This document shows positions 22,671 to 64,000 of a DNA stretch of 64,000 bases, one piece after another. The position numbers and the translations under genes were made by a program. Position 1 is the first letter of the stretch; each line of letters starts with the position of its first letter. The DNA lies in NCBI GenBank assembly GCA_965637545.1, contig OZ281494.1:32364001-32428000 (forward strand), in the 5' to 3' direction. Source of the DNA: Phallusia mammillata (taxonomy: Eukaryota). The notes under the pieces are model-generated. The model saw nothing but the letters and a program-made list of their open reading frames with translations, was not told where the DNA came from and did no database searches.

Positions 22671-22687
22671 TGACCTATGTTTGACCT
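22671..22687 (-). promoter_or_regulatory. Perfect DR5 nuclear-receptor element (candidate RARE) 4.1 kb upstream of the ZFHX ATG
   Basis: The minus strand reads AGGTCA AACAT AGGTCA. The sequence match is exact; function is untested. Confidence 0.55.
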
Positions 22688-28600: not shown

Positions 28601-28629
28601 TTCGCGGCGGGTGGGGGGAGGGTTATTAC

Positions 28630-28643
28630 GTTGCCATGGCGAC
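28630..28643. promoter_or_regulatory. RFX X-box within a CpG/GC-rich promoter-like island
   Basis: GTTGCCATGGCGAC matches the palindromic X-box GTTGCCATGGCAAC at 13/14 positions, with a CCAAT box about 85 bp away. Confidence 0.45.
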
Positions 28644-30791: not shown

Positions 30792-30823
30792 TGAACTTTG
30801 ACCTCGTCTGTTTCCATAACAAC
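30792..30823. promoter_or_regulatory. Adjacent DR1 nuclear-receptor element and X-box-like site
   Basis: TGAACTTTGACCT (minus strand AGGTCA A AGTTCA) at 30792-30804, and GTTTCCATAACAAC at 30810-30823. Confidence 0.4.
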
Positions 30824-36800: not shown

Positions 36801-39800
36801 ATTATTGGTTGTTTTGTAACATCTTTGTTTTATTTGACACCGAAATAGAAAAAGGCCATAAAGGTTTTTAATTTCAACAACACGGGTAAAATTCCTATCC
36901 ATTTGTTTCCCTGCTTTACGTCGTCATAATGAAACACATTATTACAACATAACCCATAGACTAGGTGGGAGAAGATTTCGAAAAACTCAAAAATCAGGAA
37001 AAAACAAAAAAATAAACGATGCAACTGATGGTTTCGGAGCGCATCGAGGCGCGAGAAAACAACTTCTCTAGAATGCGCTTCATTGTGACGTCACAGAGCG
37101 CGTAGGGGGATAATTAGAAGGCGGCGACCGAATAGCGTGCGACGGCAAGAGGAGCGGTATTAATGCATGCGATGTAATATAAGCAAGGTAATTGAGATGC
37201 TATCGCAAAGTTTGGGGGGGTAATTGAAGTTGCTTTGGGGGGGCCACAAAAATTGGCGTGAAGAGCAATTTCGTGTCGCTGATGTCTTAACGTGACGATC
37301 AAAACTCGCAATTACGGAGAAATTATTACGTTTTTTTGCGCAACATGATCTTTCTAATCGCTCCTGCGTTGCCGCGACGAAGGTCATGGCGTTTAAGGGA
37401 TTTTACTTCTCCATCAATCGGGCGTATTTAAAATGCCGCCGGAATATCGCATGTGCAATTTACCTGGTCACAGTACACCGGATCAATGCTCTCGGACCAG
37501 CGACATGCCGACAAGTGTACGTTTAAGTATTAAAACACAACTATACACTTATTCTCGCAAACTCAAATTAAAATGACATTAAATTATCAAAACGTCAAAA
37601 TCGACACCCTCGCCCCTGGCGCTCGGGATAAATCTCTCTTCTTCTCTCTATCCTGCTTCCTCCCGTTGCTTGGCAACCTGATTCTAAGCGTTAAATTCGC
37701 AATTACGTTAAGCCCTGAACTGGAACCCGGAACCAGGAACGCGGTGTCGTCGCGCCCCGAGGCAGTAATAGAAACAATATTAAACTGTTTAGTCAGGTCG
37801 CGTGAAAAACTGCTAAGATAATATTACAAGTGAATCAACGCCGAAAATGACATTAAGTTACGACTTTATACTTCCCTTTAGCAGGTTGTGGTTTAAAAAA
37901 TCTGAACTAGTACAAACGAGACCTAGGATATAAAGTCATAGCATTTCACTACCCTACTCCCAAAATCATTCCTTTAGTAAGTATGTAAACTACAAAATTT
38001 CTGCTTTGCGCTTTGTAAACTCTGACAAGGTGGTAAAGCATGGATATGATTTAGAAACTATTGAGGATCTTAAGCACAAAGGTCCCCTTAAATTTGCATA
38101 AAAGGCTGAAAATCCCCAAACACAAACGATTTACGGGGTTCTGTGATGTAATGCGATTTCCAAGACGTCCAAGCATTCCATTTACCTTTACAACCAAGAT
38201 TCTAGGGACGTTAAATCAACATTTGAAACATAATTTGCCAAGTCACAAAAACTTCTGTAGATACTGTAGGTACTTTTTACCTAGGGTAAGTGTGCCCCCT
38301 GGGGTACGAAGCACCTAGGTACGAGATATGGTTTCAACATAGTGGTGTTGAAGGTCCATTTGTTTACGTCAAGTTTTCGGTTATGGTAATGAATGTTTAT
38401 TAAAGAACAATTTCACAACTATGCCACTAAATGGGTAAAAATCCATCCATTTACCCACAATTACTGTATTTTTGTCTACTTATGTCATTTCATTTCAGAC
38501 CATGGGTATGAAAAGGAAAAGTCATAGCAACGTTAAGAACGGTAAAGAGTTAAAAGCCACTCGGCCAATGTATCCGTTTCATGGAATGATTTAAAGACAT
38601 TGTGAGAATATTTACGCAAAAGTTGCGTTTGATATATAATCTTTAATTAGGTCGCCGATATTTGTAAGTTGCAGACTTTTGGCTATATGCAATTTTTCTA
38701 TCTCTAAAAACATGCAAATAAAGACAAAACAACGAACCATGACTGAAAGGCCGGACAAAGACGTCACATTCTGGCGTTACGTCATACCGATGATGTCACG
38801 AGAATGTCGAAATCCGAGCAACAGAAAAGAAATGATCTTCAATGCAACAAAGTCTGTTTGCGCTTCGACAAAGATCTGACCGGTATCGGTTAAGGGAATA
38901 CCCCTCGACATGACTGTTTCACTTCAGGTTTTTCTACATGTTGTTTTTACGGCCTGCAACACAGAAGTTTAGGGAGGGTTTGGTGTTCAAAACAAAGCGG
39001 TCAGTAAACTTGAATAGAATGCATTGTTTTGGACATTAACAAGTGCTGTTGTCATCATTAATCATCATTTTTTATCAGCAACATTTTTTTTTCTTTTGTC
39101 AAGCGATGACGTCATCATTTACCGATGATGTTTGTACGTGGTTATTTGAAAATGCTAAAAGTGTTGGCTATTACTTGTTTATTTGTCAACTTTTGTCCAA
39201 GCTTTAATAAGGCTAAGAATGCAAGATCAATTTGTACACTATACCTTTAAAAATATCAACGCGAAAACCAAATATAGTCACACAATTATTTGCAAGCTTC
39301 GTCGCAATTTGCCAGCATACCAGGAAAAAGGGTTCAACAACGCTATGCGAAACAGAACAACGAGTTTTCAAAACAAGAACCTGCAACAAACAGACGTTAA
39401 TTGTTACGCAACAAGCGAAGAACCCGCGAAAAAGTTGGCCGCGTCGCGTTTAATCAGCTCGAACGGGGTACCGAGAAGCGCTAATTGAAGCGCGCGGCAT
39501 AACTAGTTCTAGAACGGCGTGACGAGCCCGTGAGGACATCACAGAAGTTTCGCGACCCTTATCACCTGACTCCAATTTCCGCGCTCTTGATTGGTTTTCC
39601 CACGAATGCGGTGAAGCGTGACGACGTTCAGGTCGTTAACTGTGCCCCAGTAAATATTGTTGCTAATTGGGGGAGGGGGTAAGAGAGAGGGGGCTGATGC
39701 GCCCCTCTCGGCCTCCACTCTAATTGCTCGTGTATTGTCAAAACACTTGGGCTCTTAATTGACGAGGAAACGGTTCGACTGTCTCGAACTATTTTTCGCC

Positions 39801-49365: not shown

Positions 49366-51670
49366 TCAAACATTTGCATCTGTTGGATTTAGCTTCCCAG
49401 TGTGTATTAGACCAGGGATTGCAAAGATGACAAGCACTAGAAACCAAAATCAATACATGATTAATATTTCCTGTTTACTATACAACATGCTGGTTAGCTA
49501 ATACAATGATTTTAAGCTTTAAAAAGTACTCATAGCAAGATTTAGGGTAAAAATGCCAAACTAACTGCAGCAGTTTCTGTGGTGGGCAATAGCCAACCTA
49601 TTCATACTTGTTTATATTATAAGCTGAAAACTTTGGACAAACATCCACAAGGATATCCTATTATCTAGGCTTGCTAACTTTTATTATGGTGGGGAAAAAT
49701 GAGATTTTTTGGGCCTAATTTTGGGTGTAACAAGTATGTTACATCGTCAGCCATTGTTGTTTTGCTAGATGTCAACAGAACCTGTTATTTTTTCACCAAC
49801 ATCTTAAGAATGGAACCCTCATAATTTTAAGTTGGTAATCGCATTTCTCCCCATTGATAAAATAGTAAGGTAAAAGTGCTTTAACTTAGTGTAGCACAGT
49901 TTATTTCCTTTATAAATATGGATGTACTTTAGTATAATCCAGAGTATTCTACCGTAAGCTTGCGCACACAAAGTAATAAAGAATCTTTACCTGAAATGTA
50001 CACAAACAGAAATGTTGAAATCAATGTTCCCAGCCAAGCAATAGACAAACCACTACCAATTGTAGTTATGTAAAATGCAACAGGATTGGTTTGTTTTAGT
50101 TCATACAAATCCATAAACGATGATTTGAGAAGAAGGACTGTTTGGTCAATGTTGTCACAAACAACAGTCAAATCCTCGTCTACATATTTGCTGTGAAAGT
50201 GAAAGTAAACAAAGCATGGTTACGGGACCAAAATCATTCATTTTATGGGATACTGTGCAGTTACTGTAGCATGTTTAAACAAAGACACAACTATCCATTC
50301 AAGTGGCACACAGCTTGGATTTTGTAATATAAGCACCAAAATCCATTCCACCAAGTGCCTTTATAATAAGTTTAATACAATTATATAGTTTACCACTTAC
50401 TAGTGATGGGAAACGAGATTTAACCATATTTAAACATTACCAACAAGTCCAATAGAGCTATAGCTGATCTAATAATAGTGTATCTTTATCATGCTTGCTT
50501 CCTTATATAAATGCATATAAAGTATATTTGTTGTTAATTTTTCACATTCAAAACTGTATGCACTATTGAATTTAAGCATAAATAAACTAATTATTGTTAC
50601 CTTTCCATTTTGGTGGCAAAGGCATCAGATAGCATTTGCATGAAAAGAGTGCCAGAAATGAACAACGCTACAGTAGTTACAACAGATAAATTGACAAACG
50701 ACAATGTTCTGAAAAGATACAACCCAATTTTGGGCAAAAGTAGTCATTAGTTCATGTCAGACAAAAACAAACTTTTCTTAAAAAACATTTTTTTTAAGTG
50801 CTCTACTGTCCCACTAATAGTGGGCATGTTAATGTCCACGACCACTCTGTCAAACTGTTTCAGTAAGTGATAATAAAGAAGCAAATGCATTTTACTTGTA
50901 TATCTGTTCTCCTCTAATTACCCTTCATTGTTTTCAGTTTTTACCAACTAACAATGCCTGTCTAGGCAGAACATATACTTTAATTTTAACAACTTCGTGT
51001 TTACTTATTGTAAGTCAGAAGCAATTGCTTTTTTATTATAAATTCTGAAAATGTCAATTAGTATTGGTGTAACAATAGGGCCTTTGTGTACTTATATGTT
51101 ATTAAAATAGGACATTTTGTACAAGATCCAGTGTCAAATATTTTTGTATGTGTATACAGTTTTGTTTTACCTTCAACAAATGCTGTTTTTTGTTGTGCAT
51201 TTCAATGTAATATTAGGCATAATTACTTATTACTTACATGAACATGGCGGATATACATAAAAATACAACACCAGCATAATATGGTTCACGCCACATCAAA
51301 ATGTTCCATAGGGGCACTACTATGCATTTGTTGTTGCTCAAAAACCGTCGAACAGTGCTGTGTTTTGCATCCTGAAATGATAAATATTGTGTAGAAAAAG
51401 TACCATGTAAAACAAAACCACATACAACAACAATTACTAAGGTAAAATAGCCATACAAAAGCATACAATATTCCAACCTATAATTTGATTTCATTAGTTT
51501 GACTACCAATTTCATAAAGAAAGTATAGGCTTGACGTTTAAACTAAATAAAACACTGTTAATGTTTGGGCATGTGTGTAATTATTACGTAATGAACTATG
51601 CAATCACCTGGTAACAGTTTTCTGCATCGTCTTGTAACTTTGAGCTGTGTACGTGTGACTTTTTGTCCAT
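49366..51670 (-). CDS. ARL6IP1: ARL6IP1-like ER-shaping (reticulon-homology) membrane protein, 191 aa, 5 exons
   Basis: Exons are 51670-51608, 51371-51238, 50708-50601, 50190-49991 and 49436-49366 (phases 0, 2, 2, 1; 576 nt). Motifs ILMWREPYY, LYELKQTNPVAFYITTIGSGLSIAWLG and IPGLIHTG align with the recalled ARL6IP1 VLRWERAW, LFTLKEEKPKMYFMTMIVSLAAVAWVG and LPGLNQHG. FAM134/RETREG is a weaker alternative. Confidence 0.78.
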
Positions 51671-51839
51671 TTAGGAAACTCATAGCCGTTGCAACCGATT
51701 ATTGCGCAAGATTTTTTTGTGAAAATCACCCTTACGAGATTATGTGCAGTAACCAAGTAACTTGAACACCTAAAGAGGAACTAAAAAATTGTTTTTTTCC
51801 AATACGTAACCTTCAACAAACACACGGGAAAAAAACTTG

Positions 51840-51849
51840 GGGAAGTCCC
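51840..51849. promoter_or_regulatory. Consensus NF-kB site in the ARL6IP1/kinase divergent intergenic region
   Basis: GGGAAGTCCC fits GGGRNNYYCC and lies between the two start codons (51670 and 52431). Confidence 0.45.
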
Positions 51850-52430
51850 AGGGATTTTTTTCTGGGTCTTCGAAAAAGTCTATTGTTTTGTTTCAGGTTA
51901 ATATTTTGTATTCCGGTTGCTGCGAAATAAATTAAATTGTTTACTTTACATAGGTCTGTCTTTAAAGCAGAACCACTTTCAAACTTTAAATGACCAACGT
52001 AACCTGTATCGAAAAAGGGGAAAAACCATAGTTGGTGATGTAATCATTGATCAACAACACTGTATAAGTGCGTATTACTTGTAAGTTATTATCGGAACTA
52101 AATATGTATTGGAAGTTAGAACACCAAACTGTAAATAGCTGCCAGCTGCTCTTTTGAAGCAACAAAGAAAAGATTAAATGAAAAAGGCCTGCCTACGTAC
52201 TTAATTAGGGGTGAACATACCTTAGTATTACTTTTTCAATTAGATTTGTACAATCTTTTGATGATACAGGTTGATTGTTCAGTATCAGTTTCAGCAACAG
52301 ATTATAATCAATAAAGTAAAAGATGTAGGAATTAAGGATAGCCTGTGATTTAAACGCTTTGTTCTGTGGTGCTTATTTCTACTGTATTGTACACTTGGAC
52401 ACTGAAAATAGTTTTTGAAGAACATGAAGT

Positions 52431-55400
52431 ATGGAAGCTGCTCATAAGGTTAGTGATTGCCAAAGTCACCAAATCTACTGTTACCGTCTTAAACCAAGAG
52501 CCTACAAAGCCACTACATGATAATTATAACTTTCTACTATTTTGAACAATACACATGGTTAGGGCTAGTGGGTTTGGGGTGAGGGTTTGTAATGAAAATA
52601 ATGCTATAATTTAATCTTCTATAGGACCTGGGTATGGTGCAGACTTTGCACAAGCTTAGCGCTGACTCAGTGTAGGCTAAGTTGGCTTGTAGTTTTAGTA
52701 GGCGGCATCCCCAAAATTTTGCTATTTGTTTAATGCATTCAGACATGGATCAAATATAGTACCTAGCACAGTCTGTGGTTGTAAAGTATAAAAGTATATT
52801 TTTTACTGTAGTTTGTAACCTTTTGTTTGCAGATAAGAAACTTCAAAGCCAATGAAATCAAATTCGTACATGGAAGAGGAGGTCATATTGGAACAGGCAC
52901 ATATGGTGTGGTGAGGCTTGCTTATCACAAAGTACATCAATGGCTGGCTGTAAAATGTCTCAAGGTCAATGTGGAAGAAAAGTGAGTATTTTTACCATTT
53001 AGTTTTCTGTGTGAAAACATGCATTTTTTATTAACAGACACTTGAATCCTGCACAAACCACTTAAACACACTTCTTTTATTTGAAATTCTGTACACTTAC
53101 TGAAAGATTCTATTATTTAGAGGGCCATTTAAAAAACATAAGCACATAACTGATAATAGCAAACTGATATTTTTTGATTGGTGTTAAGTTCATTTGCAGA
53201 ACAGAAACTTGTTGCCAAGGTCAAAAAGACCAGTTGTTGATAATCTGTCTTTGCTATAAATTAAAAAAAAACATTGTTGATTAGGTTGCATGATGAAGTA
53301 GGCCCTGTCCAAGAAGCAAATAACCCAAATGTCGTACGAGTGTTCGGTGTCTTAAAATCTCCACAAGTTATGGGAATGGTTATGGAATATTTACCAGGAA
53401 ACTGCCTTTCTGATTTGGCTTTTAACACTGAAATCCCTATTTCTCCTTTACTTTCCTTGAGATTTTGCCGAGATATCAGCAATGGAGTTGCAGGAATTCA
53501 CAATTTGCAGCCAGAAAAGCGACTAACCCATGGAGATTTAAAACTGGAAAACATACTACTGTCAAGTAACCTTGAATGCAAAATTGGCGATTTCGGCAGT
53601 TCAGAACTTGCATGGAATACTGGACATAACTCAGCTAGGGACAGAATGGAAAGAAATGATTTTACAGAAATATATGCTGCTCCTGAACGTCTGATGAATC
53701 CACACATGAAAATGAATACAGCAATGGATGTTTTTAGTATTGGCATGATCTTTTACTATCTATTGTGCCGTGAGCTTTGTGGTATGGACATATATTGCAT
53801 GCTTTTGCAGCAGGGTGGACGGCCAAGGATGGAAAAAATCAACAGTTTAAAACAAGCATTACAAAATGATCTTACCAGTTTAAAAATTATTCACACGATT
53901 GTAGCGCAGATAAAAAAATGCTGGGCACAGAATCCATTACATCGGCCGAAAATTTTGCAAATTAGAGACAACCTACAAAAGGAATTAGACCTATACAGTG
54001 ACACATGTATATTCCAATGTGTTCAAGCCACCCTTGAGAAATATGAAATTGCCAAACCCATTCTTGCAAACCACAATGATTGGATCCAAATTGAGGATTT
54101 AGGTATGTCATACCAAAATTGTATATACCTATCATGTGGAACAAACCAAAAACTGTCCTTGTGTTTGTAATATTTTTATCTTTAATATTTGGATTTAAAA
54201 AAATGGATTTAACCTTTTTTATGATGGTGTTGAACACAAGATTCCACTAGGCCAGGGCAATTGAGCTCAGTAATTAGGGTTAGAACTGACAATTTCGTAA
54301 GCCAAGGGATTTGCACTAGCCCACCAGTTACCTATGTGTTATGTTTTTCTGTAATTTCTGCAAGTAAGTTTAATGATAGTGCCAAATTGCAGATTTCCAC
54401 TCTAAACCATCACAGAGCTAAACCTAATCTGGTATGCAATGGAACATGGCTTAAGACCTTAACAAAGATAATTATTTGTACACAGATATCAATCTACAAA
54501 GTAAAGATGAAAATAATGTCACTCAAGACCGCACTGAAAGCATCAACGTTTTTCCTCTGTCTCCAGCAGCTGGTAATTACAACAAAATGATTAAATTTTG
54601 CAACAAAATATGCATAAAAGCTGCCTATACTTACTTTAGGGGTAAGAGATATTGAAGATACAACCTCACCAAAGGCAGTTCTCCAAACTTTTCTCTCTAG
54701 TTCAGGAGACTTACTCACAAATGGTAAATAAGTGATTAGATATTGTGAAGCTGGTTCAGTAACTATCTTGTGACAAGCCGGAGCATTGTTTACAATGCTC
54801 AGTTAAGCCTTTTTGGTAATTTTCTGAAAAGTTTATTATTATTAGCCATACTGATGTGTTGTTATGTTTACCAATTTAATGAGCTCAAAATAAAACATAT
54901 ATAAAGATATGTACAAAAACATTGTTCAAAGAGGTGATTCTAGCAATTTGTCAGCATTTTATCCACTTGTCAGCATTTTATCCACTTTTTTATTTGTCAG
55001 CATTTTATTCACTTTTTTAGACTTCGAACCGAATAACACTACATCACCCAAAGTTGTTTGCTCTTCAAATCGAAATGCTCCTGAAACAAGATGCGGACTA
55101 CAGTCTTCAGGTAAAAAGCACACTTATACTTTTTTACTACTTCATGTTCTGCAAGGGCTTAAAATATTTGAAATTTTTCAGACTCCGCATCCAATGACAC
55201 AACAGCACCAAAGGATGTTTTTTCTTCAAATGAATATGAAACATACACTGTACAACAACCAAGTGGTAAACAATTTATTTTATAATGCAACAGATTTTAT
55301 AAAAAATGTTTCCATTCTTTTTCAATTTCTTATATAACCAATATTCACTATATGTTTATCTTCTATTTTGCAGGGTTTAATTGCAATCTAACAGAACCAA

Positions 55401-56875
55401 AGATTGTTTTTCCTCCAAATGGAAATGAAAGAAGCACCAGACAACACCATACTGGTAAACTATTCGATAATACAATTTAATTGCACAGACTTGTTTTGCA
55501 TGGGCCTTTTCTTTTGTGACAAATGGACACCTTTTAGCATTAGTTATGATAGCAACCATTGGTCGTGTTTACCCACAATGCACCAACCTCACTTTCTTGT
55601 GAGCATGAGTCACATGTTGCTTTATAATACAGTGTACCTGCAGCGCATTTAGCCATTATTCTTTGGGCCCTTCACTGTTTCACATTCTAAAATGTTTTTA
55701 TCTTACACAGCTATATATGGCTTTGTGATTGTTTTAGTGCTTTTTTGTCGTTACTAGTTTTTTAACCAAGTGAAATAAACTCAACTCACCCATTTTTTTT
55801 TCAGGATTCAATCCCAATGATGCAACTGCTCCAAAGGTTGTATTTCCTCCAAGTGAAGCTACAGAAGAAGAAACCACCAGACAACACCCAGATGGTAAGC
55901 ATATTTTAGTGCTAAAATTAACAACTTCAAGTAACTGTAATCATAGTATGCCAGGCCTAATGATGGCGTCATACCAAATAATCGTAAGGCAATGCATAGG
56001 GTAAAAAAGACTCATGTTCTACTCACTGAGCTATCCAGGCTGTCTAAGCCTTTAAAAAATCAAATCACAAGCACTTTTCATATGCTGCACATGTCAGCTT
56101 CATTGTAGGTAATCGCATGTTTGATCATATGCATTCTTTTAGATAGTCAACTGTTTTGAAATGTACTGCTTTTTGTACCTTTAAATTCACATAACCTTTT
56201 TGCACTTGCAAAAAGCTTCCATTCTAAACCATAAATATGCAGTATGTAAATCGGAAATTATGTTGGTTTATTGCATCTATTTTAAAATGTAACAAATGTA
56301 CATGTGTTTAATTTTTAGATCAACCAAATGATTTGGAAACAGCACTGCTCATGACCCGAATGACATTGGATATCACTGTTAGCAACAATGACTGTACGTT
56401 GTCTACAAAAAGAAACGTTTGGACAGAAATAAACAAATTTTGTAAAGCTGCAACAACACACATCCAATCTCATCACAACCAAGATGGGCGAATTCTTCAA
56501 TCAGTCAAAACTATTTTAGAGAAAGTCAGAAACCTACCTTTCAATGTTAGGTTTAAATCATTGCTTGAGGCAAAGTTATTGTGCTTTTTAGCGGACTGTT
56601 ATTTGCACTTCAGTGAGTTTGGTGAAGCAATGGTCATGGCAACTCAGGCAAAATCACTTTTGGACGCCTTTACTGAACAATCAGAAAAGTTATCATTATT
56701 CCCCTGTTGTAACCACATCATTGGGAGAGCTTACATAGGCTTGGGTCGCAATAAAGAAGCCGAACAAGTCATTTTTAATGCCATATCAATGACTGAACAA
56801 AGCGAAGATTTTGGAAGTACAGAACAAAAAAATGCTGCCCTACGAAATTTACATCAATTACTCTATACATGCTAA
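52431..56875 (+). CDS. RIPK-like (TKL group) Ser/Thr kinase with five repeat exons and a C-terminal TPR-like domain, about 656 aa, 9 exons
   Basis: Exons are 52431-52448 (start, less certain), 52833-52981, 53285-54102, 54640-54723, 55021-55110, 55182-55265, 55374-55454, 55805-55894 and 56319-56875, all GT-AG and in frame (1971 nt). Kinase motifs: GTGTYG, LAVK, HGDLKLENILL, KIGDFG, YAAPE, DVFSIG, CW...P..RP. Two TPR-like motifs: FLADCYLHFSEFGEA and IIGRAYIGLGRNKEA. Confidence 0.85.
54948..55020 (+). repeat. Three TTGTCAGCATTTTAT(C/T)CAC units ending at the exon-5 splice acceptor of the kinase
   Basis: Directly visible tandem repeat. Confidence 0.8.
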
Positions 56876-58289
56876 ATTTTTGTTGATTTAAAATGTGGTG
56901 ATAATCTTCAAATTGTGTGACATGATATATGCAATCTTTTTAGTTTAATGATTATGTGTTTTATTGTACATATTTGATGAGATGTGTAAGTGTGTTTTCA
57001 TGAATTCTGTTTCAGCTTTTATCACTTTTTATTCGTTTTGAAGATGCATTATGTATTTTTTTTTATCTGTGTTTGCATTTTTACTGTTTTCTCAATGCTC
57101 TTTTGCTGTTACATCAAAATGGGTAGATCTGTTTTATGAGGAAGTGTAAACTTAATTAATAATGAAACCAACTTTTGAAGTGCGCAAAATGGTGCATTTT
57201 TGTGTTGTTAGTATGCTGGTTTGAAAATAAATAAATAAAAATTGTTTGATGAAACACTATTGCCAAAAGCGGCGTCAACTGGACATATTTATAGCCACGT
57301 TTTAGATTGTTCTAAAGTTATTTTATTCAGCTAACAACAATGTCAAAATGTGACACTTTTTGTCATGTTTTCTATTATTATCACATGGATTTCTTAAACT
57401 AAGTGCGTTCATGCTTGTCTAAGTAACGTGTACAATTATCCCGATATAGACGAGTGAACTAATGACAATGACGATTCTTAAAATGTCTACATTACGTTTA
57501 GTGATGTTCTGTGTCATAGAAGCTCTCTGGTAGTATTGTTTTTGATCAAGAAAAAGCATAATTAATTAAGGTCGTGTGACCGCTGCAAATGCTCGTTTTT
57601 TCAGAAACAAGATCTTCGGTAACCAGTGCATAAGGCGGAAAACACATGTTACAGTGCTCTTTGGATCATACAAATGTCACAAAAACTTGTTCAATTAAGG
57701 CAATGGTTTTCTTTAAAGGTTAACCCAGCAACCTGTAACCAACTTCTGACCTTGGAAATTTAAAAAATGATACAACAGACTTGCAATAAAACATGCAACT
57801 TTACGGTGGATGAGCATGACGGACTGTAGCGTTGGACCTGCATCAAGGATAAAAAAGAGAAACCCAGGTAATTTTGGCGGCAAGTAGTTTATCGCTAATT
57901 GACAGTCAGCGTCAAACTGTTGCCGTCCAATCGTCCATAAGCTGCTAACATGGCAAAGGCACTTGGAGCCTTTCTTATGTGGGATAGTTCAACGCCAAGC
58001 GTCATAACTGCTGCCGACTTGGAATTGATTAGAATTTGATTCAGCAAATAATGTGGTATGTTTATGTCTTGTATAATCGCGTTTTCTTTGGTGCGAAAAA
58101 GGAAAGCAATACACGTCACGGATGACTAAACTCCAGAGGAAGGAAAGCCAACGCACTGTTTTGTTTGGTGTCGTCATACAGTCAAGAGTCAACCTCTGTT
58201 CATGTGGCAAACGTTATCAAAGAGGAACTAATTTTTCGAAAGCGGAACCAACCTCTTTTGTGTACTCTTTGCACCAGCTGCAGTTGTAA

Positions 58290-58500
58290 TCGTGTTTTTC
58301 TTTGCTCGGCTTCAGACCTTATCGCATTTTTTTGCAAAGTATGTGATACATAGATTTTTTTTGTTTCATTGTTTACCTGGCTTATACTCACACACACATT
58401 TTAATGTGGTACAACTACATTCCACCGAAGCCTTGGTTGTCGGATATACAGACAGTATTTGCATGAAGATCAGATATTTTTGCAAAAATCCAATTAAGCT
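58290..58500 (-). pseudogene. Decayed hAT transposase C-terminal dimerisation-domain relic
   Basis: Minus-strand translation ILSVYPTTKASVECSCTTLKCV*V*AR*TMKQ...FAKK resembles the hATC consensus LsiP.TsAS.ERSFStLKrvKtwlRstM.Q...FAkk. Multiple stops. Confidence 0.45.
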
Positions 58501-59828
58501 TCTTTATTCAGTTCCTAACAGGATCCTTACAAAAAACAGCAAGGGAAACATAAACTAGTTAAACCAGACTGAATTACGCAAACAATTTTGAAGCGTCGGA
58601 CATAACAGGTGGGGAAAAACTGTCATTTTTTCTGTTGCGGCCGCCTGACAACCTAAACCGGAACTGACGCACGTCGATTGGCAACAAATGTTTCGACAGT
58701 GGGACTTTCCCCCAGTGGAAACTAGACTCCCGCAGGCAGCCTTTTTCTTTAAAACACCAGACGATCATACACCGAGCGCGTCTACCTCTGCGCGTGACTT
58801 TTAGTATTCATGAAGAGAGTTTACCTTCTGAATAGGCGGCTGGGGACAGGTCGCACAAAGTAGGAAACAAAGGTTAAGGTGCGGCGATTGACAAACAGCT
58901 GAATTGTAGCGTTGCAAGGTTTCCTGAACACAGTGTTCAAATGTCCTTATCAGCTGTGTTTGTGGGTTGGCAAATTGCATGGTTTTAACGATCAGTTTAA
59001 AGTAGAGATTCGGCGAATCGGCAAAAATTGGGTTAGGCTGAAACCAAATTGTCGGCAGTTTTGACAGCACCGAATCATTTGACGTCACGCGAAATCGTAC
59101 GCTACGGGCTCGAACTAGTTTTCCTACTAGACAAACCGTGCAGAATAGTTGTGTTTCATTGTCATTCTGTTTCTGTGGGGTTTGAATTAATGAATTACTT
59201 TACGCATTTTTAGTTATTGGATAGTTTAAAAGATTGTGTGGTACCTTATAAAGCAGAAAAAAACAATTACGTTTGAAATTTGTGTTCTTAAAAGATTTAG
59301 TTTTGACCAAATCCTAATTAATTATGTGAACGAAACCAAATCATTGCAAAAAAGGCCAATTCGGCTGAATATATTGAGCAAACCGAATACTCGGCAGATC
59401 TTTGATTAAAAGGCAACAAAATTAATGTAAAATTAGGTTTCATGCAAAGATGTTGGTTTGTCCGTTTTTTTTTTATTGCTGTTGAAACCATAAATTGTGT
59501 GCTTTACATAAGCAAACACAAAAACTTTTCATTTTCTTTTAGTTGTTTAGGTTTAGGCAAACTGAACTATGTGTGAAAAACAATGTCCATAAAGGGATAC
59601 ATTATTTCATTAGCTCCTCTGTTTGAAGAATTTTTATCTAATGGAGAGTTGAAGGATATTTGTGGAAATTTGTACAGAAATCGTATTCTCACATCTGGTT
59701 AGTAGTGCTTTTATAAACTTGGCATGTCTTTTTTTAGAATCAGATTACGCTACCCTAGACTGAAACCTAAACCTGTACAATGGTCAGACTGAAAACTTTG
59801 ACAAGTCTGAAGTCGTCCACCGTTTTAT

Positions 59829-59873
59829 TAGACATATATATTTCGCCTAAGTAATAGGCATCGTCAGTATCTA
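59829..59873 (-). ncRNA. Minimal type-I hammerhead ribozyme (Penelope pLTR copy 1)
   Basis: UAGAUA-CUGACGA-U-GCCUA(UUACU)UAGGC-GAAA-UAUAUA-UGUCUA: 6-bp stem I, conserved core, 5-bp stem II, palindromic AUAUAU stem III. Predicted cleavage is after AUA. Confidence 0.82.
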
Positions 59874-60137
59874 AAAACAAAACAGCGCTAAAAAATGGTA
59901 TGCAGGTATAACTATAAAGCACAAACAAAACATATTAAAAACTGCTGACAGTAAGGTAGAACTAGGACCTGCAGATGGCGCGGCCAAACACGCACTAGTA
60001 AAGATGGAAAGAAAAGGAAAAACGCTCAATCTGTGGCGCGGGGCAAAAGAAGGTAGATAAGGACGGCAGAAGCGTTGTAAAAACCAATGGCGGAAACACT
60101 GATAAAAATGAACGCGTAGGAATAAACAAATAAAATG

Positions 60138-62981
60138 TTATTTAATGTAGGGTAAAAACATTTTTTGTAAGTTTATTTCAGCTCCAATCTTGCTGGCCCA
60201 CTTACTTTCATAGATGTCCAGTAGATGGATAGGTGGCTGCTCCAAAAACTGCACCCGAAAACACGTGCTGATAGGGTCACGGGCGTTGGCGCTATGCTCT
60301 GTGGCATAGTGCTGACAAAGGGCTGCCTTTTCGTTATAATCACCCGGTTTGAAAGAATTCCACATAGATCTGTGTCCCGTCCAACGTACTGAAAACTTAT
60401 TTTTTGTTTGACCGACATACTGCTTTTGGCATATTGTGCAGGTGGCAGCATATATGCCATAGTTGCGGCATGTGAGTGTTTGCCGTAACTTTGTTACACC
60501 CTTTTTGCTTTCTATGTTAGTGGTATAGTCAACCATTCCTTTGTGATTTCCAAAGTGTCCACACAAAGCACAGTGTCCACAAGGTGCAGATGAGCCCCCA
60601 ATAGGCATGGAACTGTTTTTCCCGACTTGCGCTAGCCGTCTGTAGCGGGTAAGGAGGTTTCCGAGTGTTGGTGGTCGTTTGTATGTTATTGTGATATTTT
60701 TTACCAAACTTCGGTCTTTTGCGGAAGGTTGTAGTAGTAATGGAAAGCTCGTTGCCCAAACATTCAGAGCCTTTTGCGAGCTGTTGCCATTCGAGGGTGG
60801 AAATCTGTTTGTCCACATACTTGCTTTTTCAATGACGTCATTTGTCATTGACGTAGGGAAGCAGGATAGTTTGGCTTTGATACGCAGTTTGCCAAGGCTG
60901 GCTCTGAAATCATCGTCACGTTCGTTTAAGCGCCGTAGTCGTTTTGACTCTCCATGTATAATGGACTTAAAAACGGAAGGAGGGTGGTGGGACCATCCGT
61001 TTAAAAATCGTCGGCCGGTTGCGGTGTCTTTGACGTAGTCTGTTGTTTTAAATTTAAATTTATTCTGTCGGCTGATGACGTGGTTTACATCCAGAAATGG
61101 AATATGCCCCTCGGTTTGGGCGGTTGTAAGGTAGTTGTGGGTTATTTCCAAACCGTGAGTGGCAAACACGCTCTCGATACCCCTAATGGTTGTTCTGAAG
61201 ATATCGTAGCCAAAACAGAGATAAATCATATCGTCAATGAACCTCATGAACAGTTCTGTTCTTTGTATAAAGCACGCTGCCTGCACCATGATATAATGAA
61301 CGCCAATGTTGGCGAGCGAGACAGAATGGTTGTCACCAGTTACGATGCCCTTTTTCTGAGTGTAAAAATTGTCCCCGTGTTTGAGGATGGCATTTTCCAA
61401 ACATAAGAATGTTAGTTCGATGAGGTTTTCTATACTATGTTTGCTGAAGTTGCTCTCCGTTGCAAGCGCGTCTTTAAGCGCCGCACGCAGGTGCGACCGG
61501 TCCATGTTGTTGTAAAGTGATTTGACATCTGCTGTTACGATAAACAGAGGCGTATCCGCAAGTTGTTTTTCAATTGTTGATGTTGTCTTTTCCTTCCAAT
61601 TTAAAAGTTCACGTAAATAATGAGAACTGTCCCGGCAGTACTCAGGAACAACGGCTTGGTTGTATGAGACACTTATTGGCTTTAACAGATATTCTAAGAA
61701 CGCTGTAATTCTGGACATGGGTGTGTGACTCAGCGATTGCAGCAACCGAACAGGTATTTCACTGACGTCCATCTCTACCAGTTGCTTCAAACCCACCTTG
61801 TGCGTTTTGAACAAGGGATAGGCGTATGATGGTGTACAACATGAAAAGTGCTTAGCCGAGGGGCCAGGAACATGTTGATAGCTATTTCCCTTGCATTTTA
61901 TACCGAGTGTGTGCCATAGCATTATGTCGCTTAAAACGTTATCTCTGTGAAGGTTTATGATTTTTTCTTCACACTTCTTTTTGGCCCGAGAAAGGTTTCC
62001 TAAGTATACTTCAGAGGAATATTCCAGCTTGACGTGTGTTTCGAGCGATTTTTCCATAACCTGTTGGTAGTCTTCATAGTCAATGATTATGATTTTGCCA
62101 TCCTTGTCCGATTTGCAAATGACAATTGTGTGGCTTGATGTCAGGCGAATCAGCTTGCGTAGACTCCACTTCATGCTGGTATTAAGGTTGCATCGTTGGT
62201 GATACCGTTGCATTACCTTTGTTCCTAATTGACGCAGCTTGGCGAAGGCAATATCACCATAAACTTTAATGGCGTCACCAAGAAGGTCTTTATGTGGTCT
62301 GGAGTATTTTTGCACTTTTAGTTTTTCGGGTATCGCTGGTTCTTGGTGATTTTCTTCGAACAGTGAACTCCACTCGAGCCTCCGAACATGTTGGTAGGCA
62401 TTTAACCACTCGCGATTTTCAATTGTTTCCGTCCACCGTGGTGTAGGAGCGAAATTGAGACCGTAACTAAGCAACAGCTTGTCGTTAAAATCCAATGTCA
62501 CGGAGGACTTATTGATAACGGTTTGTCCTAGGTTGTCGACTAACGCTGCTTTTCTTAACGTATCACGTCGGTTGTTGTATCTTTTTCTATCTTTCTTGTT
62601 TCTCCTGTTTTTTGACGTATTTCTGTAATTGGTGGGTGTTTTGAATTGAGATAAATTGGTCATTAAGCGCGTTTTTTCCTGTTTTCTGTATAAAAAGTTG
62701 AATTTCCTGATATGTTTCCGTTTACATGTCACATTGGCGTATCTTAATTGTTCCCGATCAACCTTCGTAAGATTGTGCCAAGAAGGTTCTATTTTGGCCG
62801 CTGCGTTTTGCAGTCGAGGAAGGTCTTTAGCAATTCTTCTCTGTTGTTGAATTAAAAGCAAGTCAAAATCCATACCCTTGCGTTGGTTTGATGGCAGTAG
62901 AACGTTGCATGATAAACAACGTTTGAGCAAGACCGTCCTTTGTTTGTACGATACGTACTGCAAGAACTGCTTGTTGGTCAT
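60138..62981 (-). CDS. Penelope-like reverse transcriptase + GIY-YIG endonuclease, intact 947-aa ORF
   Basis: LSYGLNFAPTP, KSDKDGKIIIIDYEDY, FKTHK, TADVKSLY, QKKGIVTG, RFIDD, IPFLDV, SHHP; linker CGHCALC; YGIYAATCTICQKQYVGQT...RWTGH. Confidence 0.95.
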   Translation of the reverse strand: MTNKQFLQYVSYKQRTVLLKRCLSCNVLLPSNQRKGMDFDLLLIQQQRRIAKDLPRLQNAAAKIEPSWHNLTKVDREQLRYANVTCKRKHIRKFNFLYRKQEKTRLMTNLSQFKTPTNYRNTSKNRRNKKDRKRYNNRRDTLRKAALVDNLGQTVINKSSVTLDFNDKLLLSYGLNFAPTPRWTETIENREWLNAYQHVRRLEWSSLFEENHQEPAIPEKLKVQKYSRPHKDLLGDAIKVYGDIAFAKLRQLGTKVMQRYHQRCNLNTSMKWSLRKLIRLTSSHTIVICKSDKDGKIIIIDYEDYQQVMEKSLETHVKLEYSSEVYLGNLSRAKKKCEEKIINLHRDNVLSDIMLWHTLGIKCKGNSYQHVPGPSAKHFSCCTPSYAYPLFKTHKVGLKQLVEMDVSEIPVRLLQSLSHTPMSRITAFLEYLLKPISVSYNQAVVPEYCRDSSHYLRELLNWKEKTTSTIEKQLADTPLFIVTADVKSLYNNMDRSHLRAALKDALATESNFSKHSIENLIELTFLCLENAILKHGDNFYTQKKGIVTGDNHSVSLANIGVHYIMVQAACFIQRTELFMRFIDDMIYLCFGYDIFRTTIRGIESVFATHGLEITHNYLTTAQTEGHIPFLDVNHVISRQNKFKFKTTDYVKDTATGRRFLNGWSHHPPSVFKSIIHGESKRLRRLNERDDDFRASLGKLRIKAKLSCFPTSMTNDVIEKASMWTNRFPPSNGNSSQKALNVWATSFPLLLQPSAKDRSLVKNITITYKRPPTLGNLLTRYRRLAQVGKNSSMPIGGSSAPCGHCALCGHFGNHKGMVDYTTNIESKKGVTKLRQTLTCRNYGIYAATCTICQKQYVGQTKNKFSVRWTGHRSMWNSFKPGDYNEKAALCQHYATEHSANARDPISTCFRVQFLEQPPIHLLDIYESKWASKIGAEINLQKMFLPYIK

Positions 62982-63139
62982 ACTGAGCTACACAGGACGT
63001 CGCTGCTTGTAGACAATAAACTGTGTAGTATATTATAAATCACGAGTCACCAGAGACTCAGTACGACAGATGGAGACAACAGTCGCATATAATAACAGAC
63101 TGAAAACTTTGACAAGTCTGAAGTCGTCCACCGTTTTAT

Positions 63140-63184
63140 TAGACATATATATTTCGCCTAAGTAATAGGCATCGTCAGTATCTA
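63140..63184 (-). ncRNA. Minimal type-I hammerhead ribozyme (Penelope pLTR copy 2)
   Basis: Identical to 59829-59873 and 3311 nt upstream on the sense strand, about 160 nt before the ORF ATG. Confidence 0.82.
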
Positions 63185-63448
63185 AAAACAAAACAGCGCT
63201 AAAAAATGGTATGCAGGTATAACTATAAAGCACAAACAAAACATATTAAAAACTGCTGACAGTAAGGTAGAACTAGGACCTGCAGATGGCGCGGCCAAAC
63301 ACGCACTAGTAAAGATGGAAAGAAAAGGAAAAACGCTCAATCTGTGGCGCGGGGCAAAAGAAGGTAGATAAGGACGGCAGAAGCGTTGTAAAAACCAATG
63401 GCGGAAACACTGATAAAAATGAACGCGTAGGAATAAACAAATAAAATG

Positions 63449-64000
63449 TTATTTAATGTAGGGTAAAAACATTTTTTGTAAGTTTATTTCAGCTCCAATC
63501 TTGCTGGCCCACTTACTTTCATAGATGTCCAGTAGATGGATAGGTGGCTGCTCCAAAAAATGCACCCGAAAACACGTGCTGATAGGGTCACGGGCGTTGG
63601 CGCTATGCTCTGTGGCATAGTGCTGACAAAGGGCTGCCTTTTCGTTATAATCACCCGGTTTGAAAGAATTCCACATAGATCTGTGTCCCGTCCAACGTAC
63701 TGAAAACTTATTTTTTGTTTGACCGACATACTGCTTTTGGCATATTGTGCAGGTGGCAGCATATATGCCATAGTTGCGGCATGTGAGTGTTTGCCGTAAC
63801 TTTGTTACACCCTTTTTGCTTTCTATGTTAGTGGTATAGTCAACCATTCCTTTGTGATTTCCAAAGTGTCCACACAAAGCACAGTGTCCACAAGGTGCAG
63901 ATGAGCCCCCAATAGGCATGGAACTGTTTTCCCCGACTTGCGCTAGCCGTCTGTAGCGGGTAAGGAGGTTTCCGAGTGTTGGTGGTCGTTTGTATGTTAT
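63449..64000 (-). CDS. 3' part (linker + GIY-YIG) of the second tandem Penelope copy, 5'-truncated by the window edge
   Basis: Near-identical to 60138-60689, differing by Q>H and K>E substitutions. Confidence 0.85.
   Translation of the reverse strand: MTYKRPPTLGNLLTRYRRLAQVGENSSMPIGGSSAPCGHCALCGHFGNHKGMVDYTTNIESKKGVTKLRQTLTCRNYGIYAATCTICQKQYVGQTKNKFSVRWTGHRSMWNSFKPGDYNEKAALCQHYATEHSANARDPISTCFRVHFLEQPPIHLLDIYESKWASKIGAEINLQKMFLPYIK

What the first reader, a model, noticed from the sequence alone, without database searches (positions are those of the whole stretch)
52431..56875. Unusual kinase architecture: non-RD RIPK-like domain, repeat linker and C-terminal TPRs
The catalytic residues look intact (K of AVK, D of HGD, DFG, APE). 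The non-RD loop is typical of kinases tied to innate-immune receptors. Vertebrate RIPKs end in death, CARD, RHIM or ankyrin modules; here a helical domain with two TPR-like motifs replaces them. I do not recognise this kinase-repeat-TPR layout as a named family. It may be a lineage-specific sensor or adaptor kinase in which the TPRs detect a ligand and the repeats set spacing or docking.
Basis: partly seen in the sequence, partly recalled or inferred. Interest (0 to 1): 0.75.

Follow-up and report, generated by a model that had tools for sequence, protein, structure and literature searches.

The report
Sea-squirt RIPK-like kinase with TPR tail
This is a real, expressed sea-squirt gene that joins an immune-type (RIPK-like) protein kinase, through a flexible linker built from six repeated mini-exons, to a small helical TPR-like docking domain; it belongs to an uncharacterised sea-squirt kinase family whose tail domains are swapped between members, and its function is untested.

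Summary
One 2,179-nt RNA contig with no mismatches joins ten GT..AG exons from 52306 to 56871. Two further studies support parts of it, and a DNA run lacks the joints. So the last exon, 56319-56875, belongs to the kinase transcript.

The 685-aa protein has three parts:
- An N-terminal kinase with every catalytic motif intact and a non-RD HGD loop.
- A 173-aa Thr/Ser/Asn/Pro-rich linker encoded by six phase-1 mini-exons.
- A 184-aa all-helical tail that looks TPR-like by fold and by weak sequence signals, though it stays below Pfam's cut-off.

Among solved structures the kinase is closest to RIPK2 and RIPK1. It nests in a clade of about 60 proteins; all named members are ascidian, and nearly all carry HGD. 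Members of that clade carry different tails: TPR-like here and in a Ciona protein, armadillo-like in Clavelina, Kelch in another Ciona protein, and SPRY.

This tail has no detectable sequence relative among 1.84 billion representatives, apart from three generic TPR proteins. I found no paper on the family.

The scan has already flagged sister genes elsewhere in this genome. I did not check those notes. An immune-sensor role is plausible but untested.

The parts
52306..52448 (+). Exon 1: 5' UTR (from 52306, the start of the RNA contig) plus the first 6 codons (ATG 52431). Two short upstream ATGs lie at 52323 (one codon) and 52424 (7 codons, overlapping the main ATG).
   Evidence: RNA contigs in three studies start at 52306-52338 and splice from 52448 to 52833. 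In-frame TGA at 52425 and the uATGs.
52833..52981 (+). Exon 2: kinase N-lobe with the Gly-loop GTGTYG (52890-52907) and the AVK lysine K47 (52953-52955). It ends in phase 2.
   Evidence: Pfam Pkinase positions 5-38. The same exon sits upstream of the kinase exon in related loci L002 and L003.
53285..54102 (+). Exon 3: the rest of the kinase domain, with E60, HGD (53529-53537), DFG (53589-53597), APE (53679-53687) and HRP. It also holds a conserved 28-aa post-kinase segment (54018-54101).
   Evidence: Pfam Pkinase E 2.1e-28. RIPK2 best in PDB, with the alignment running into the post-kinase helix. Family alignment A1. Motif positions.
54486..55894 (+). Linker region of six phase-1 symmetric mini-exons: 54486-54572, 54640-54723, 55021-55110, 55182-55265, 55374-55454 and 55805-55894. 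Together they encode residues 329-501. The linker is rich in T, S, N, P, D and E. Five exons share a core motif T-[TA]-[SA]-P-K-V-V-F-[PS]-[PS].
   Evidence: All six are joined in order in one RNA contig. DNA repeat families D1-D4. Peptide alignment, a repeat HMM that matches only this gene, and composition.
56319..56875 (+). Exon 10: C-terminal 184-aa all-helical domain plus the stop codon (56873-56875). The TPR-like part is about residues 553-679 (56474-56854). The clearest TPR motif is at residues 628-661 (56699-56800).
   Evidence: Joined to mini-exon 9 in RNA from two studies. AF2 gives 8 helices. Foldseek and VIA top matches are TPR domains. The only sequence hits are TPR proteins. Pfam TPR_8 is sub-threshold. 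Language-model features score 0.95 to TPR clusters.

Best explanation
What it is. This is a single-copy member (within this window) of a RIPK-like Ser/Thr kinase clade found so far only in ascidians. It is transcribed and correctly spliced.

The protein is cytosolic, with no signal peptide or membrane segment. It keeps the general RIPK design of an N-terminal kinase, a flexible intermediate region and a C-terminal protein-interaction module. Here the module is a short TPR-like solenoid of about four helical hairpins, not a DD, CARD, RHIM or ankyrin domain.

Inferred mechanism, not shown:
1. The TPR-like groove docks the kinase onto a partner protein or peptide, such as a receptor tail, an adaptor or a non-self ligand.
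2. Clustering of several molecules brings the non-RD kinase domains together. They then activate by proximity or autophosphorylation, as RIPK and IRAK kinases do.
3. The roughly 170-residue disordered linker, encoded by repeated mini-exons, gives reach and carries repeated short motifs that could serve as docking or phosphorylation sites.

Across the clade the same kinase is combined with TPR-like, armadillo-like, Kelch or SPRY domains. This suggests a common signalling head aimed by exchangeable recognition or docking modules.
For: Shown here:
- Gene model and expression: one perfect 2,179-nt RNA contig, partial contigs from two other studies, and no such joints in the DNA run. Sixteen RNA-like runs from four studies hold part of the gene.
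- Intact 685-codon frame and all catalytic motifs.
- RIPK affinity: phmmer gives RIPK2 2.5e-19, against RIPK1 and TAK1 at about 1e-12. The family profile gives RIPK2 1.7e-36 and RIPK1 2.1e-36, then RIPK4 5e-31, RIPK3 and TAK1 at about 1e-27, and IRAK4 2e-26.
- Tree: the gene lies inside a 60-row clade (SH-aLRT 99). That clade plus Ciona and Phallusia proteins groups with shark RIPK1 and away from Pelle and plant RLCK (SH-aLRT 96).
- HGD in 63 of 67 catalytic loops scored in the tree set.
- No membrane segment and no RHIM.
- Tail is a TPR-like fold: AF2 pLDDT 78.8; Foldseek top hits sNASP-TPR, BtubC, LGN/Pins and NprR, TM 0.57-0.62; VIA Z 14.9 to LGN; Atlas TM 0.61-0.71 to TPR and Sel1 clusters; phmmer hits only TPR-rich proteins.
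- Swapped tails within the clade: Ciona P0136 is TPR-like. The Clavelina tails are armadillo-like, with APC-ARM at E 4e-5 and 88 hits at or below 1e-3. Ciona P0141 and P0138 carry Kelch, and Clavelina P0133 carries SPRY.

Against: - There is no functional or tissue data. The runs are coded, so whether the gene is expressed in haemocytes or after immune challenge is unknown.
- The TPR call is below Pfam's gathering score. By VIA Z-score it ties with 14-3-3 (Z about 14), which the tool itself warns is a common level for helical repeats.
- The structure comes from a single sequence.
- The tree holds only one vertebrate RIPK (RIPK1) and no RIPK2-4, TAK1, MLK or LRRK, so placement within TKL kinases is provisional.
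- The gene sits on a long branch (1.02; best identity 37%) and its tail has no sequence relatives. That would also fit a drifting paralogue.
- P0126, a kinase with TSP1 repeats, may be an annotation fusion, so not every 'swapped tail' is secure.
Confidence: 0.6

Rival explanations
1. The tail is an intramolecular regulator rather than a sensor. The TPR-like (or 14-3-3-like) groove binds the repeated linker motifs, possibly after the kinase phosphorylates them. Binding in cis would give auto-inhibition. Binding in trans would give head-to-tail oligomers.
For: The linker carries five copies of a conserved short motif, T-x-x-P-K-V-V-F-P/S, and is rich in Ser and Thr. TPR and 14-3-3 domains bind extended peptides, and the fold matches include many 14-3-3-phosphopeptide complexes at Z about 14. 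The linker repeats are private to this gene among all sequences fetched, as would be expected if they co-evolve with their own tail.
Against: No interaction was modelled or measured. Relatives have quite different linkers and tails. The motif has no known TPR-ligand signature.
Confidence: 0.15
2. It is an ordinary non-immune signalling or scaffold kinase, for example in development, polarity or the cytoskeleton. The RIPK-like and non-RD features reflect ancestry only.
For: The best structural matches of the tail include LGN/Pins and NASP, which are not immune proteins. The gene is solitary in this 64-kb window rather than in a tandem cluster. Parts of the transcript occur in 16 RNA-like runs from four studies, which would fit broad expression.
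Against: Housekeeping kinases are normally conserved, yet this one has no relative above 41% identity in the kinase (37% over the aligned columns of the tree) and none at all in the tail. The clade is lineage-restricted, expanded and domain-shuffled, which is the usual pattern of defence or recognition families.
Confidence: 0.15
3. It is a drifting paralogue. It is still transcribed and open, but under relaxed constraint and on its way to loss.
For: It sits on a long terminal branch. Its tail is an orphan by sequence. Among the variants listed for another individual (X7), all 10 changed codons in the last mini-exon and the tail change the amino acid, while its 610-nt kinase contig is identical to the window.
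Against: The frame is intact across ten exons, every catalytic residue is kept, all splice sites are canonical, and expression appears in several studies. An identical kinase next to a varying tail fits diversifying selection at least as well as decay. The variant list is partial (45 rows hidden) and may include a close paralogue.
Confidence: 0.08
4. The gene model is a chimera of two genes, a kinase gene and a separate TPR gene.
For: None found.
Against: One RNA contig with 0 mismatches spans all ten exons. The join from 55893/55894 to 56318/56319 is seen in two studies. All exons are phase-compatible.
Confidence: 0.02

Closest known systems
Vertebrate RIPK2 and RIPK1 (TKL group)
   Same: The kinase domain is the best match among all solved structures. 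The catalytic loop is non-RD: the RIPK2 chain aligned reads HHD and shark RIPK1 reads HKD. The layout is an N-terminal kinase, a flexible middle and a C-terminal interaction module. The alignment to RIPK2 runs on into the post-kinase helix.
   Different: There is no CARD, death domain or RHIM. A TPR-like solenoid takes their place. Sequence identity is low. Orthology to any one RIPK is not established.
Ciona intestinalis LOC100178883 (P0136, 739 aa, 'uncharacterized protein')
   Same: It has an N-terminal HGD RIPK-like kinase followed by a C-terminal TPR-like region of about 290 aa (features 0.94, structural TM about 0.5 to TPR clusters; faint Pfam TPR_2). It is an ascidian protein.
   Different: Its kinase lies outside the 60-row core clade. 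Its tail is longer and is not alignable to this one (BLASTP E above 0.2). No mini-exon repeat linker was detected in it.
Clavelina lepadiformis proteins annotated 'RIPK4-like' or uncharacterised (P0031, P0124-P0132)
   Same: They fall in the same core kinase clade and share HGD, a kinase at the very N-terminus and a low-complexity linker followed by a helical repeat tail.
   Different: Their tail is an armadillo-like domain of about 300 aa. It is unrelated to this tail by profile comparison (hhalign probability 0.15%).
Ciona intestinalis LOC100184958 (P0141) and P0138: RIPK-like kinase with a Kelch propeller
   Same: The kinase is related and N-terminal, with a repeat-type interaction domain at the C-terminus. 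Locus L002 appears to have the same layout.
   Different: The tail is a beta-propeller, not a helical solenoid.
Plant BSK kinases and mycobacterial PknG (kinase with C-terminal TPR; from my own knowledge, not tested here)
   Same: The domain order is the same: a Ser/Thr kinase followed by TPRs used for protein docking. Bacterial Pkinase-TPR clusters also appear among the structural neighbours.
   Different: The kinase lineages are different, and plant kinases score far below RIPKs. This protein has no Gly at position 2, so N-myristoylation is ruled out; I recall BSKs as N-myristoylated. The resemblance is convergent, not a sign of kinship.

Membership tests
RIPK family (vertebrate RIPK1-4) | Kinase domain closest to RIPKs among characterised kinases | tested here: met
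   phmmer gives RIPK2 2.5e-19 as top hit. The family profile gives RIPK2 1.7e-36 and RIPK1 2.1e-36, then RIPK4 5e-31, RIPK3 and TAK1 at about 1e-27, and IRAK4 2e-26.
RIPK family (vertebrate RIPK1-4) | Groups with RIPKs rather than IRAK/Pelle or other TKL kinases in a tree | tested here: inconclusive
   The clade joins shark RIPK1 and separates from Pelle and plant RLCK/WAK (SH-aLRT 96). However, only one RIPK could be fetched, and no RIPK2-4, TAK1, MLK or LRRK.
RIPK family (vertebrate RIPK1-4) | C-terminal death domain, CARD, RHIM or ankyrin repeats | tested here: not met
   Pfam finds none. No [IV]Q[ILV]G motif is present.
TPR superfamily | Sequence match at Pfam gathering score | tested here: not met
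   TPR_8 scores 16.7 bits against 25.7, and TPR_7 scores 14.8 against 27.9.
TPR superfamily | Helix-hairpin right-handed solenoid matching solved TPR domains | tested here: met
   Eight helices. Matches to LGN, sNASP, BtubC and NprR with TM 0.57-0.62. Z 14.9 and 14.8. Atlas TM 0.61-0.71. Caveat: 14-3-3 ties at Z about 14, and that level is common for helical repeats.
TPR superfamily | Distant sequence relatives are TPR proteins | tested here: met
   Only 3 hits among 1.84 billion representatives (E 9e-5 to 3.5e-4). All three are TPR-rich, with 3-6 matched stretches each. Language-model features score 0.95 to TPR clusters.
Ascidian HGD RIPK-like kinase clade (unnamed) | Nested within the clade with support | tested here: met
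   It lies inside the 60-row clade, SH-aLRT 99. Profile scores drop sharply after the clade, from 1e-50 to 1e-44 and then 1e-29.
Ascidian HGD RIPK-like kinase clade (unnamed) | HGD catalytic loop, YAAPE, and a conserved post-kinase segment | tested here: met
   HGD in 63 of 67 catalytic loops scored in the tree set. This gene reads LTHGDLKLENIL and YAAPE. Post-kinase columns are conserved in A1.
Ascidian HGD RIPK-like kinase clade (unnamed) | Shared intron position between the Gly-loop exon and the main kinase exon | tested here: met
   In L002 and L003 a separate upstream exon matches residues 6-49/50, and the kinase exon starts at residue 56, as it does here. The invariant 'R' at that column of A1 is the read-through of the AG acceptor.
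IRAK/Pelle family | N-terminal death domain before the kinase | tested here: not met
   The kinase starts about 20 residues from the N-terminus, and an in-frame stop lies upstream of the ATG. No DD is found by Pfam.
Plant BSK-type kinase-TPR proteins | RLCK-type kinase; N-terminal Gly2 for myristoylation (I recall BSKs as N-myristoylated) | tested here: not met
   Plant RLCK and STY kinases score about 1e-22 to 1e-29 against 1e-36 for RIPKs. The N-terminus reads MEAAHK, with no Gly at position 2.
Pseudokinase | Loss of the VAIK Lys, the HxD Asp or the DFG Asp | tested here: not met
   K47, D140, N145 and D158 are all present.

The most novel reading that the evidence does not exclude
This gene is one receptor of a diversified intracellular surveillance system in ascidians. 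A common RIPK-type kinase head is fused to exchangeable, fast-evolving recognition domains (TPR-like, armadillo-like, Kelch, SPRY). Binding of a pathogen-derived or non-self ligand by the tail clusters the kinases and triggers inflammatory or cell-death signalling. That would be a role like that of NLRs or plant tandem-kinase and RLCK sensors, but without a NACHT/NB-ARC module, in the closest invertebrate relatives of vertebrates.
Probability: 0.2. Interest if true: 0.85.

Novelty: new variant of a known kind. Interest (0 to 1): 0.55.

Why it matters
Tunicates are the sister group of vertebrates, yet the origin and early diversity of RIPK signalling (NF-kB activation, necroptosis, NOD signalling) is poorly mapped outside vertebrates. 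One paper I read notes that RIPKs are fast-evolving and hard to identify in invertebrates (PMC11507063).

This locus gives a fully RNA-supported gene model for one member of a RIPK-like clade found so far only in ascidians, in which the usual death-fold tail is replaced by repeat-type binding domains. If the tails are recognition modules, the family would be a new class of animal sensor-kinase. It would also be a natural experiment in how a signalling kinase is re-aimed by domain swapping.

If not, the locus still documents a sizeable unannotated part of the ascidian kinome. It is also a clear case of a linker built by duplication of a mini-exon.

Tried and rejected
- Whole-protein searches were not possible. 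The spliced protein has no reference, and read-through references are not accepted. I searched the kinase exon and the tail exon separately and did not type the sequence.
- The word-index search with the kinase exon alone gave only 5 hits. The family appeared only with profiles A1 and A2.
- A full TKL phylogeny against RIPK1-5, IRAK, LRRK and MLK could not be built. The searches returned only one RIPK (shark RIPK1) and Pelle. PDB hits carry no protein ids, and I did not type sequences from memory.
- The tail was compared with the tails of relatives. BLASTP against all fetched proteins found nothing beyond generic TPR proteins. hhalign against the Clavelina tail profile gave probability 0.15%. 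BLASTP against the Ciona P0136 and Clavelina P0035 tails was not significant.
I replaced it with protein comparison.
- tblastn of every part of the protein against the window found no second copy.
- A repeat-unit HMM run against all fetched proteins and the six-frame ORFs of L001-L003 found no convincing match (best E 0.01).
- The PDB sequence search with the tail found nothing meaningful.
- Rfam and ARAGORN on 50000-64000 gave no hits, so the high-copy intronic repeats stay unclassified. No inverted repeats were found there.
- Paper searches for RIPK with ascidian, tunicate, Ciona or TPR found no description of the family.
- Exon skipping among the mini-exons was not seen in the listed joints, but 4 joints were not shown.
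Full report
**1. What is at 52431-56875**

The window is AT-rich eukaryotic DNA. Reading the three forward frames gave:
- a Gly-loop exon;
- a roughly 270-codon kinase exon;
- a series of short open pieces, each flanked by AG and GT;
- a final 185-codon open frame.

All boundaries I derived by eye were phase-compatible. RNA data then confirmed them. Run X1 holds a 2,179-nt contig that matches the window without a single mismatch. It joins 52306-52448, 52833-52981, 53285-54102, 54486-54572, 54640-54723, 55021-55110, 55182-55265, 55374-55454, 55805-55894 and 56319-56871, and every skipped part is GT..AG. Contigs from two other studies (X5, X7) carry subsets of the same joints. The DNA-like run X17 covers the introns and shows none of the joints.

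Sixteen RNA-like runs from four studies hold part of the gene. The best four hold 0.37-0.38 of the sampled words, close to the exonic share of the stretch.

The RNA contig answers this: it is the last exon of the kinase mRNA.

**2. The protein**

The protein has 685 residues. ATG 52431 has a good context (A at -3, G at +4). An in-frame TGA lies two codons upstream, so the frame cannot extend 5' in this mRNA. Two short upstream ATGs sit in the 125-nt leader. There is no hydrophobic segment and no RHIM-like tetrapeptide.

| Residues | Part |
|---|---|
| about 20-300 | kinase domain |
| 301-328 | conserved post-kinase segment |
| 329-501 | linker |
| 502-685 | helical tail |

**3. Kinase**

- Pfam Pkinase scores E 2.1e-28 on the main exon.
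- All catalytic elements are present: GTGTYG, K47, E60, HGD-LK-LEN, DFG, APE and HRP.

Against all PDB sequences the exon matches RIPK2 best (2.5e-19). The next hits are an EGFR chain (2.2e-15) and Snf1 (1.3e-13), then RIPK1 and TAK1 (about 1e-12). The RIPK2 alignment continues into the post-kinase helix. A profile of the exon with four relatives gives this ranking:

| PDB family | E-value |
|---|---|
| RIPK2 | 1.7e-36 |
| RIPK1 | 2.1e-36 |
| RIPK4 | 5e-31 |
| RIPK3, TAK1 | about 1e-27 |
| IRAK4 | 2e-26 |

So the kinase is RIPK-like, without a clear preference between RIPK1 and RIPK2.

**4. The family**

The word-index search with the exon alone gave five unnamed fragments. Profiles gave about 50 more, most of them exon-sized ORFs called on large eukaryote-like contigs filed as metagenomes. 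They also returned annotated full-length proteins:
- Clavelina lepadiformis: P0031, named 'RIPK4-like' by NCBI, plus P0035 and P0124-P0134;
- Ciona intestinalis: P0136 and P0141;
- Phallusia mammillata: P0137, and P0140, named 'RIPK1-like'.

Scores fall sharply after the family.

In a quick maximum-likelihood tree of 69 kinase domains, the window's protein lies inside a 60-row clade (SH-aLRT 99). It sits on a long branch (1.02), and its best identity to any row is 37%. That clade, together with the Ciona and Phallusia proteins, groups with shark RIPK1 and away from Pelle and plant RLCK/WAK (SH-aLRT 96). Sampling of reference kinases is thin, because no other RIPK could be fetched.

HGD occurs in 63 of the 67 catalytic loops scored, and YAAPE is almost invariant. 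The intron between the Gly-loop exon and the main exon is at the same place in two related loci.

All named relatives are ascidians. From that, and from the scan's earlier notes, I take the window to be from a sea squirt. I did not identify the species.

**5. The linker**

Six mini-exons of 81-90 nt, all phase 1 at both ends, encode residues 329-501. Five share 60-79% DNA identity limited to the exon and its splice sites. They also share a peptide core, T-[TA]-[SA]-P-K-V-V-F-[PS]-[PS], followed by a polar stretch that ends in Gly or Asp at the splice junction. The first mini-exon is a weaker match.

T, S, N, P, D and E make up 57% of the linker. From that composition I infer that it is disordered. 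All six mini-exons are present in the full RNA contig, and no skipping appears among the listed joints. An HMM of the unit finds nothing convincing in any other sequence fetched, so the repeat arose within this gene or its close kin.

**6. The tail**

Sequence evidence is weak but consistent:
- Pfam gives only sub-threshold TPR_8 and TPR_7 hits at residues 633-658.
- The PDB sequence search gives nothing.
- An exhaustive phmmer run over 1.84 billion representatives gives only three hits (E 9e-5 to 3.5e-4). All three are long TPR-rich proteins (NB-ARC-TPR, TPR, TPR-CHAT), each matched in several stretches.
- Language-model features place the tail with TPR clusters (0.95).

Fold evidence points the same way. 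AF2 from the single sequence gives eight helices (pLDDT 78.8, pTM 0.76).

| Search | Best matches | Score |
|---|---|---|
| Foldseek, PDB | sNASP-TPR, BtubC, LGN/Pins, NprR | E 4e-3 to 2e-2, TM 0.57-0.62 |
| VIA-align | LGN, sNASP | Z 14.9, 14.8 |
| Atlas shape search | NASP, Sel1, CHAT-TPR, kinesin light chain | TM 0.61-0.71 |

In the VIA-align list 14-3-3 ties at Z about 14, a level the tool warns is common for helical repeats.

I conclude that the tail is a TPR-like alpha-solenoid of about four hairpins. It is not a certified Pfam TPR, and it is an orphan by sequence.

**7. Tails differ within the clade**

- The Clavelina tails form their own homologous domain of about 300 aa. That domain folds as armadillo repeats (pLDDT 80; APC-ARM and designed ARM at E 4e-5; 88 hits at or below 1e-3). 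It is unrelated to this tail (hhalign probability 0.15%).
- Ciona P0136 has a tail of about 290 aa that looks TPR-like by features and by the Atlas model. It does not align with this one.
- Ciona P0141 and P0138 carry Kelch propellers.
- Clavelina P0133 has an N-terminal SPRY.
- P0126 carries TSP1 repeats and may be a fused annotation.
- Locus L002 shows a kinase exon followed by a Ser-rich repeat ORF and a Kelch-like ORF.

So the constant part of the family is the kinase, and the variable part is a repeat-type interaction domain.

**8. Variation between individuals**

In run X7 the 610-nt kinase contig is identical to the window. The contigs over the last mini-exon and the first half of the tail differ at about 5%. 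The 11 listed differences fall in 10 codons, and all 10 change the amino acid. Across both runs, the listed kinase-region variants are 2 non-synonymous and 4 synonymous.

The list is partial (45 rows hidden), and a close paralogue cannot be excluded. I treat this as a lead towards diversifying selection on the tail and not as a result.

**9. How it most likely works**

Shown here: the gene is real and expressed; the kinase looks catalytically competent, is cytosolic and is RIPK-like; the linker is flexible and repeated; the tail is a helical solenoid.

Inferred from what is known of RIPK and IRAK kinases and of TPR domains: the tail docks the protein to a partner or ligand, clustering activates the kinase heads, and the linker gives reach and carries short motifs. 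An immune or cell-death role is suggested by four things:
- the RIPK affinity;
- the non-RD loop (abstract of PMC8463890);
- the restriction to one lineage;
- the domain shuffling.

Nothing here tests that role. Rival readings and my odds for them are given in the Rival explanations section.

**10. Comparison with what is known, and novelty**

The protein works like a RIPK in design. It fails RIPK membership on the tail, and orthology is not shown. The order kinase-then-TPR is known in plant BSKs and in bacterial kinases such as PknG (from my own knowledge). The kinase there is of a different lineage, so the likeness is convergent.

Five paper searches found no description of an ascidian RIPK-like family with TPR, ARM or Kelch tails. 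The one relevant paper I read only lists Ciona among the genomes it screened, and says RIPKs are hard to find in invertebrates.

I rate this a new variant of a known kind.

**11. Earlier notes of this scan**

The scan had already flagged sister genes on other parts of this genome. Those notes describe tandem clusters, 'well over 100 copies', variable TPRs, and the same mini-exon array read separately. I could not read those loci, so I use their claims only as leads.

My independent results agree on the architecture and on the lack of literature. They add three points:
- this copy's tail is an orphan by sequence;
- the Clavelina tails are armadillo-like;
- by my scores RIPK2 is at least as close as RIPK1.

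Noticed in passing
window 55537-56127 (introns 8 and 9): Contig depth in the DNA run is 19,000-38,000 here, against about 150-900 elsewhere. Many loose ends cluster at 55562-55604 and 55939. These look like high-copy interspersed repeats inside the introns. The stretch 55990-56050 read on the minus strand looks tRNA-like by eye, but ARAGORN and Rfam find nothing, and no inverted repeats were found.
   Followed up: partly
window 52560-52620 (intron 1): A short G-rich stretch with degenerate TTAGGG-like units. RNA contigs of two studies touch only about 40 nt here and continue on both sides into unlike TTAGGG-like sequence. This is probably a dispersed repeat transcribed elsewhere.
   Followed up: no
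window 51607-51800: RNA contigs from three studies (754, 659 and 159 nt) match only about 100-190 nt here and run on into sequence that is not in this stretch. It is either an exon of another transcript or a transcribed repeat, just upstream of the kinase gene.
   Followed up: no
window 52323 and 52424: Two upstream ATGs lie in the 125-nt 5' leader. One is followed at once by a stop. The other opens a 7-codon uORF that overlaps the main ATG out of frame, so it may regulate translation.
   Followed up: no
window 54948-55019: A perfect or near-perfect 19/27-nt tandem repeat (TTGTCAGCATTTTATCCAC...) forms the pyrimidine-rich tract directly upstream of the acceptor of mini-exon 3 of the linker. 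One DNA contig lacks 40 nt of it (joint 54946 to 54987), so its length varies.
   Followed up: no
window 55805-56530, run X7 against the window: The last mini-exon and the first half of the tail differ by about 5% in another individual's RNA contigs, while its kinase contig is identical. All 10 changed codons listed change the amino acid. The list is partial, and a close paralogue is possible.
   Followed up: partly
L002 9881-20481 (contig filed as a metagenome, ENA ERZ25067576): A related kinase exon is followed about 6 kb downstream by an ORF with four or more Ser-rich units of about 25 aa (16786-17277), and then by a Kelch-like ORF (20251-20481). This looks like a kinase-linker-Kelch gene on a large eukaryotic contig labelled as metagenome.
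   Followed up: partly
P0126 and P0129 (Clavelina lepadiformis): These annotated proteins join the RIPK-like kinase to thrombospondin type-1 repeats, which are normally extracellular. They are likely fused gene models rather than real architectures.
   Followed up: no
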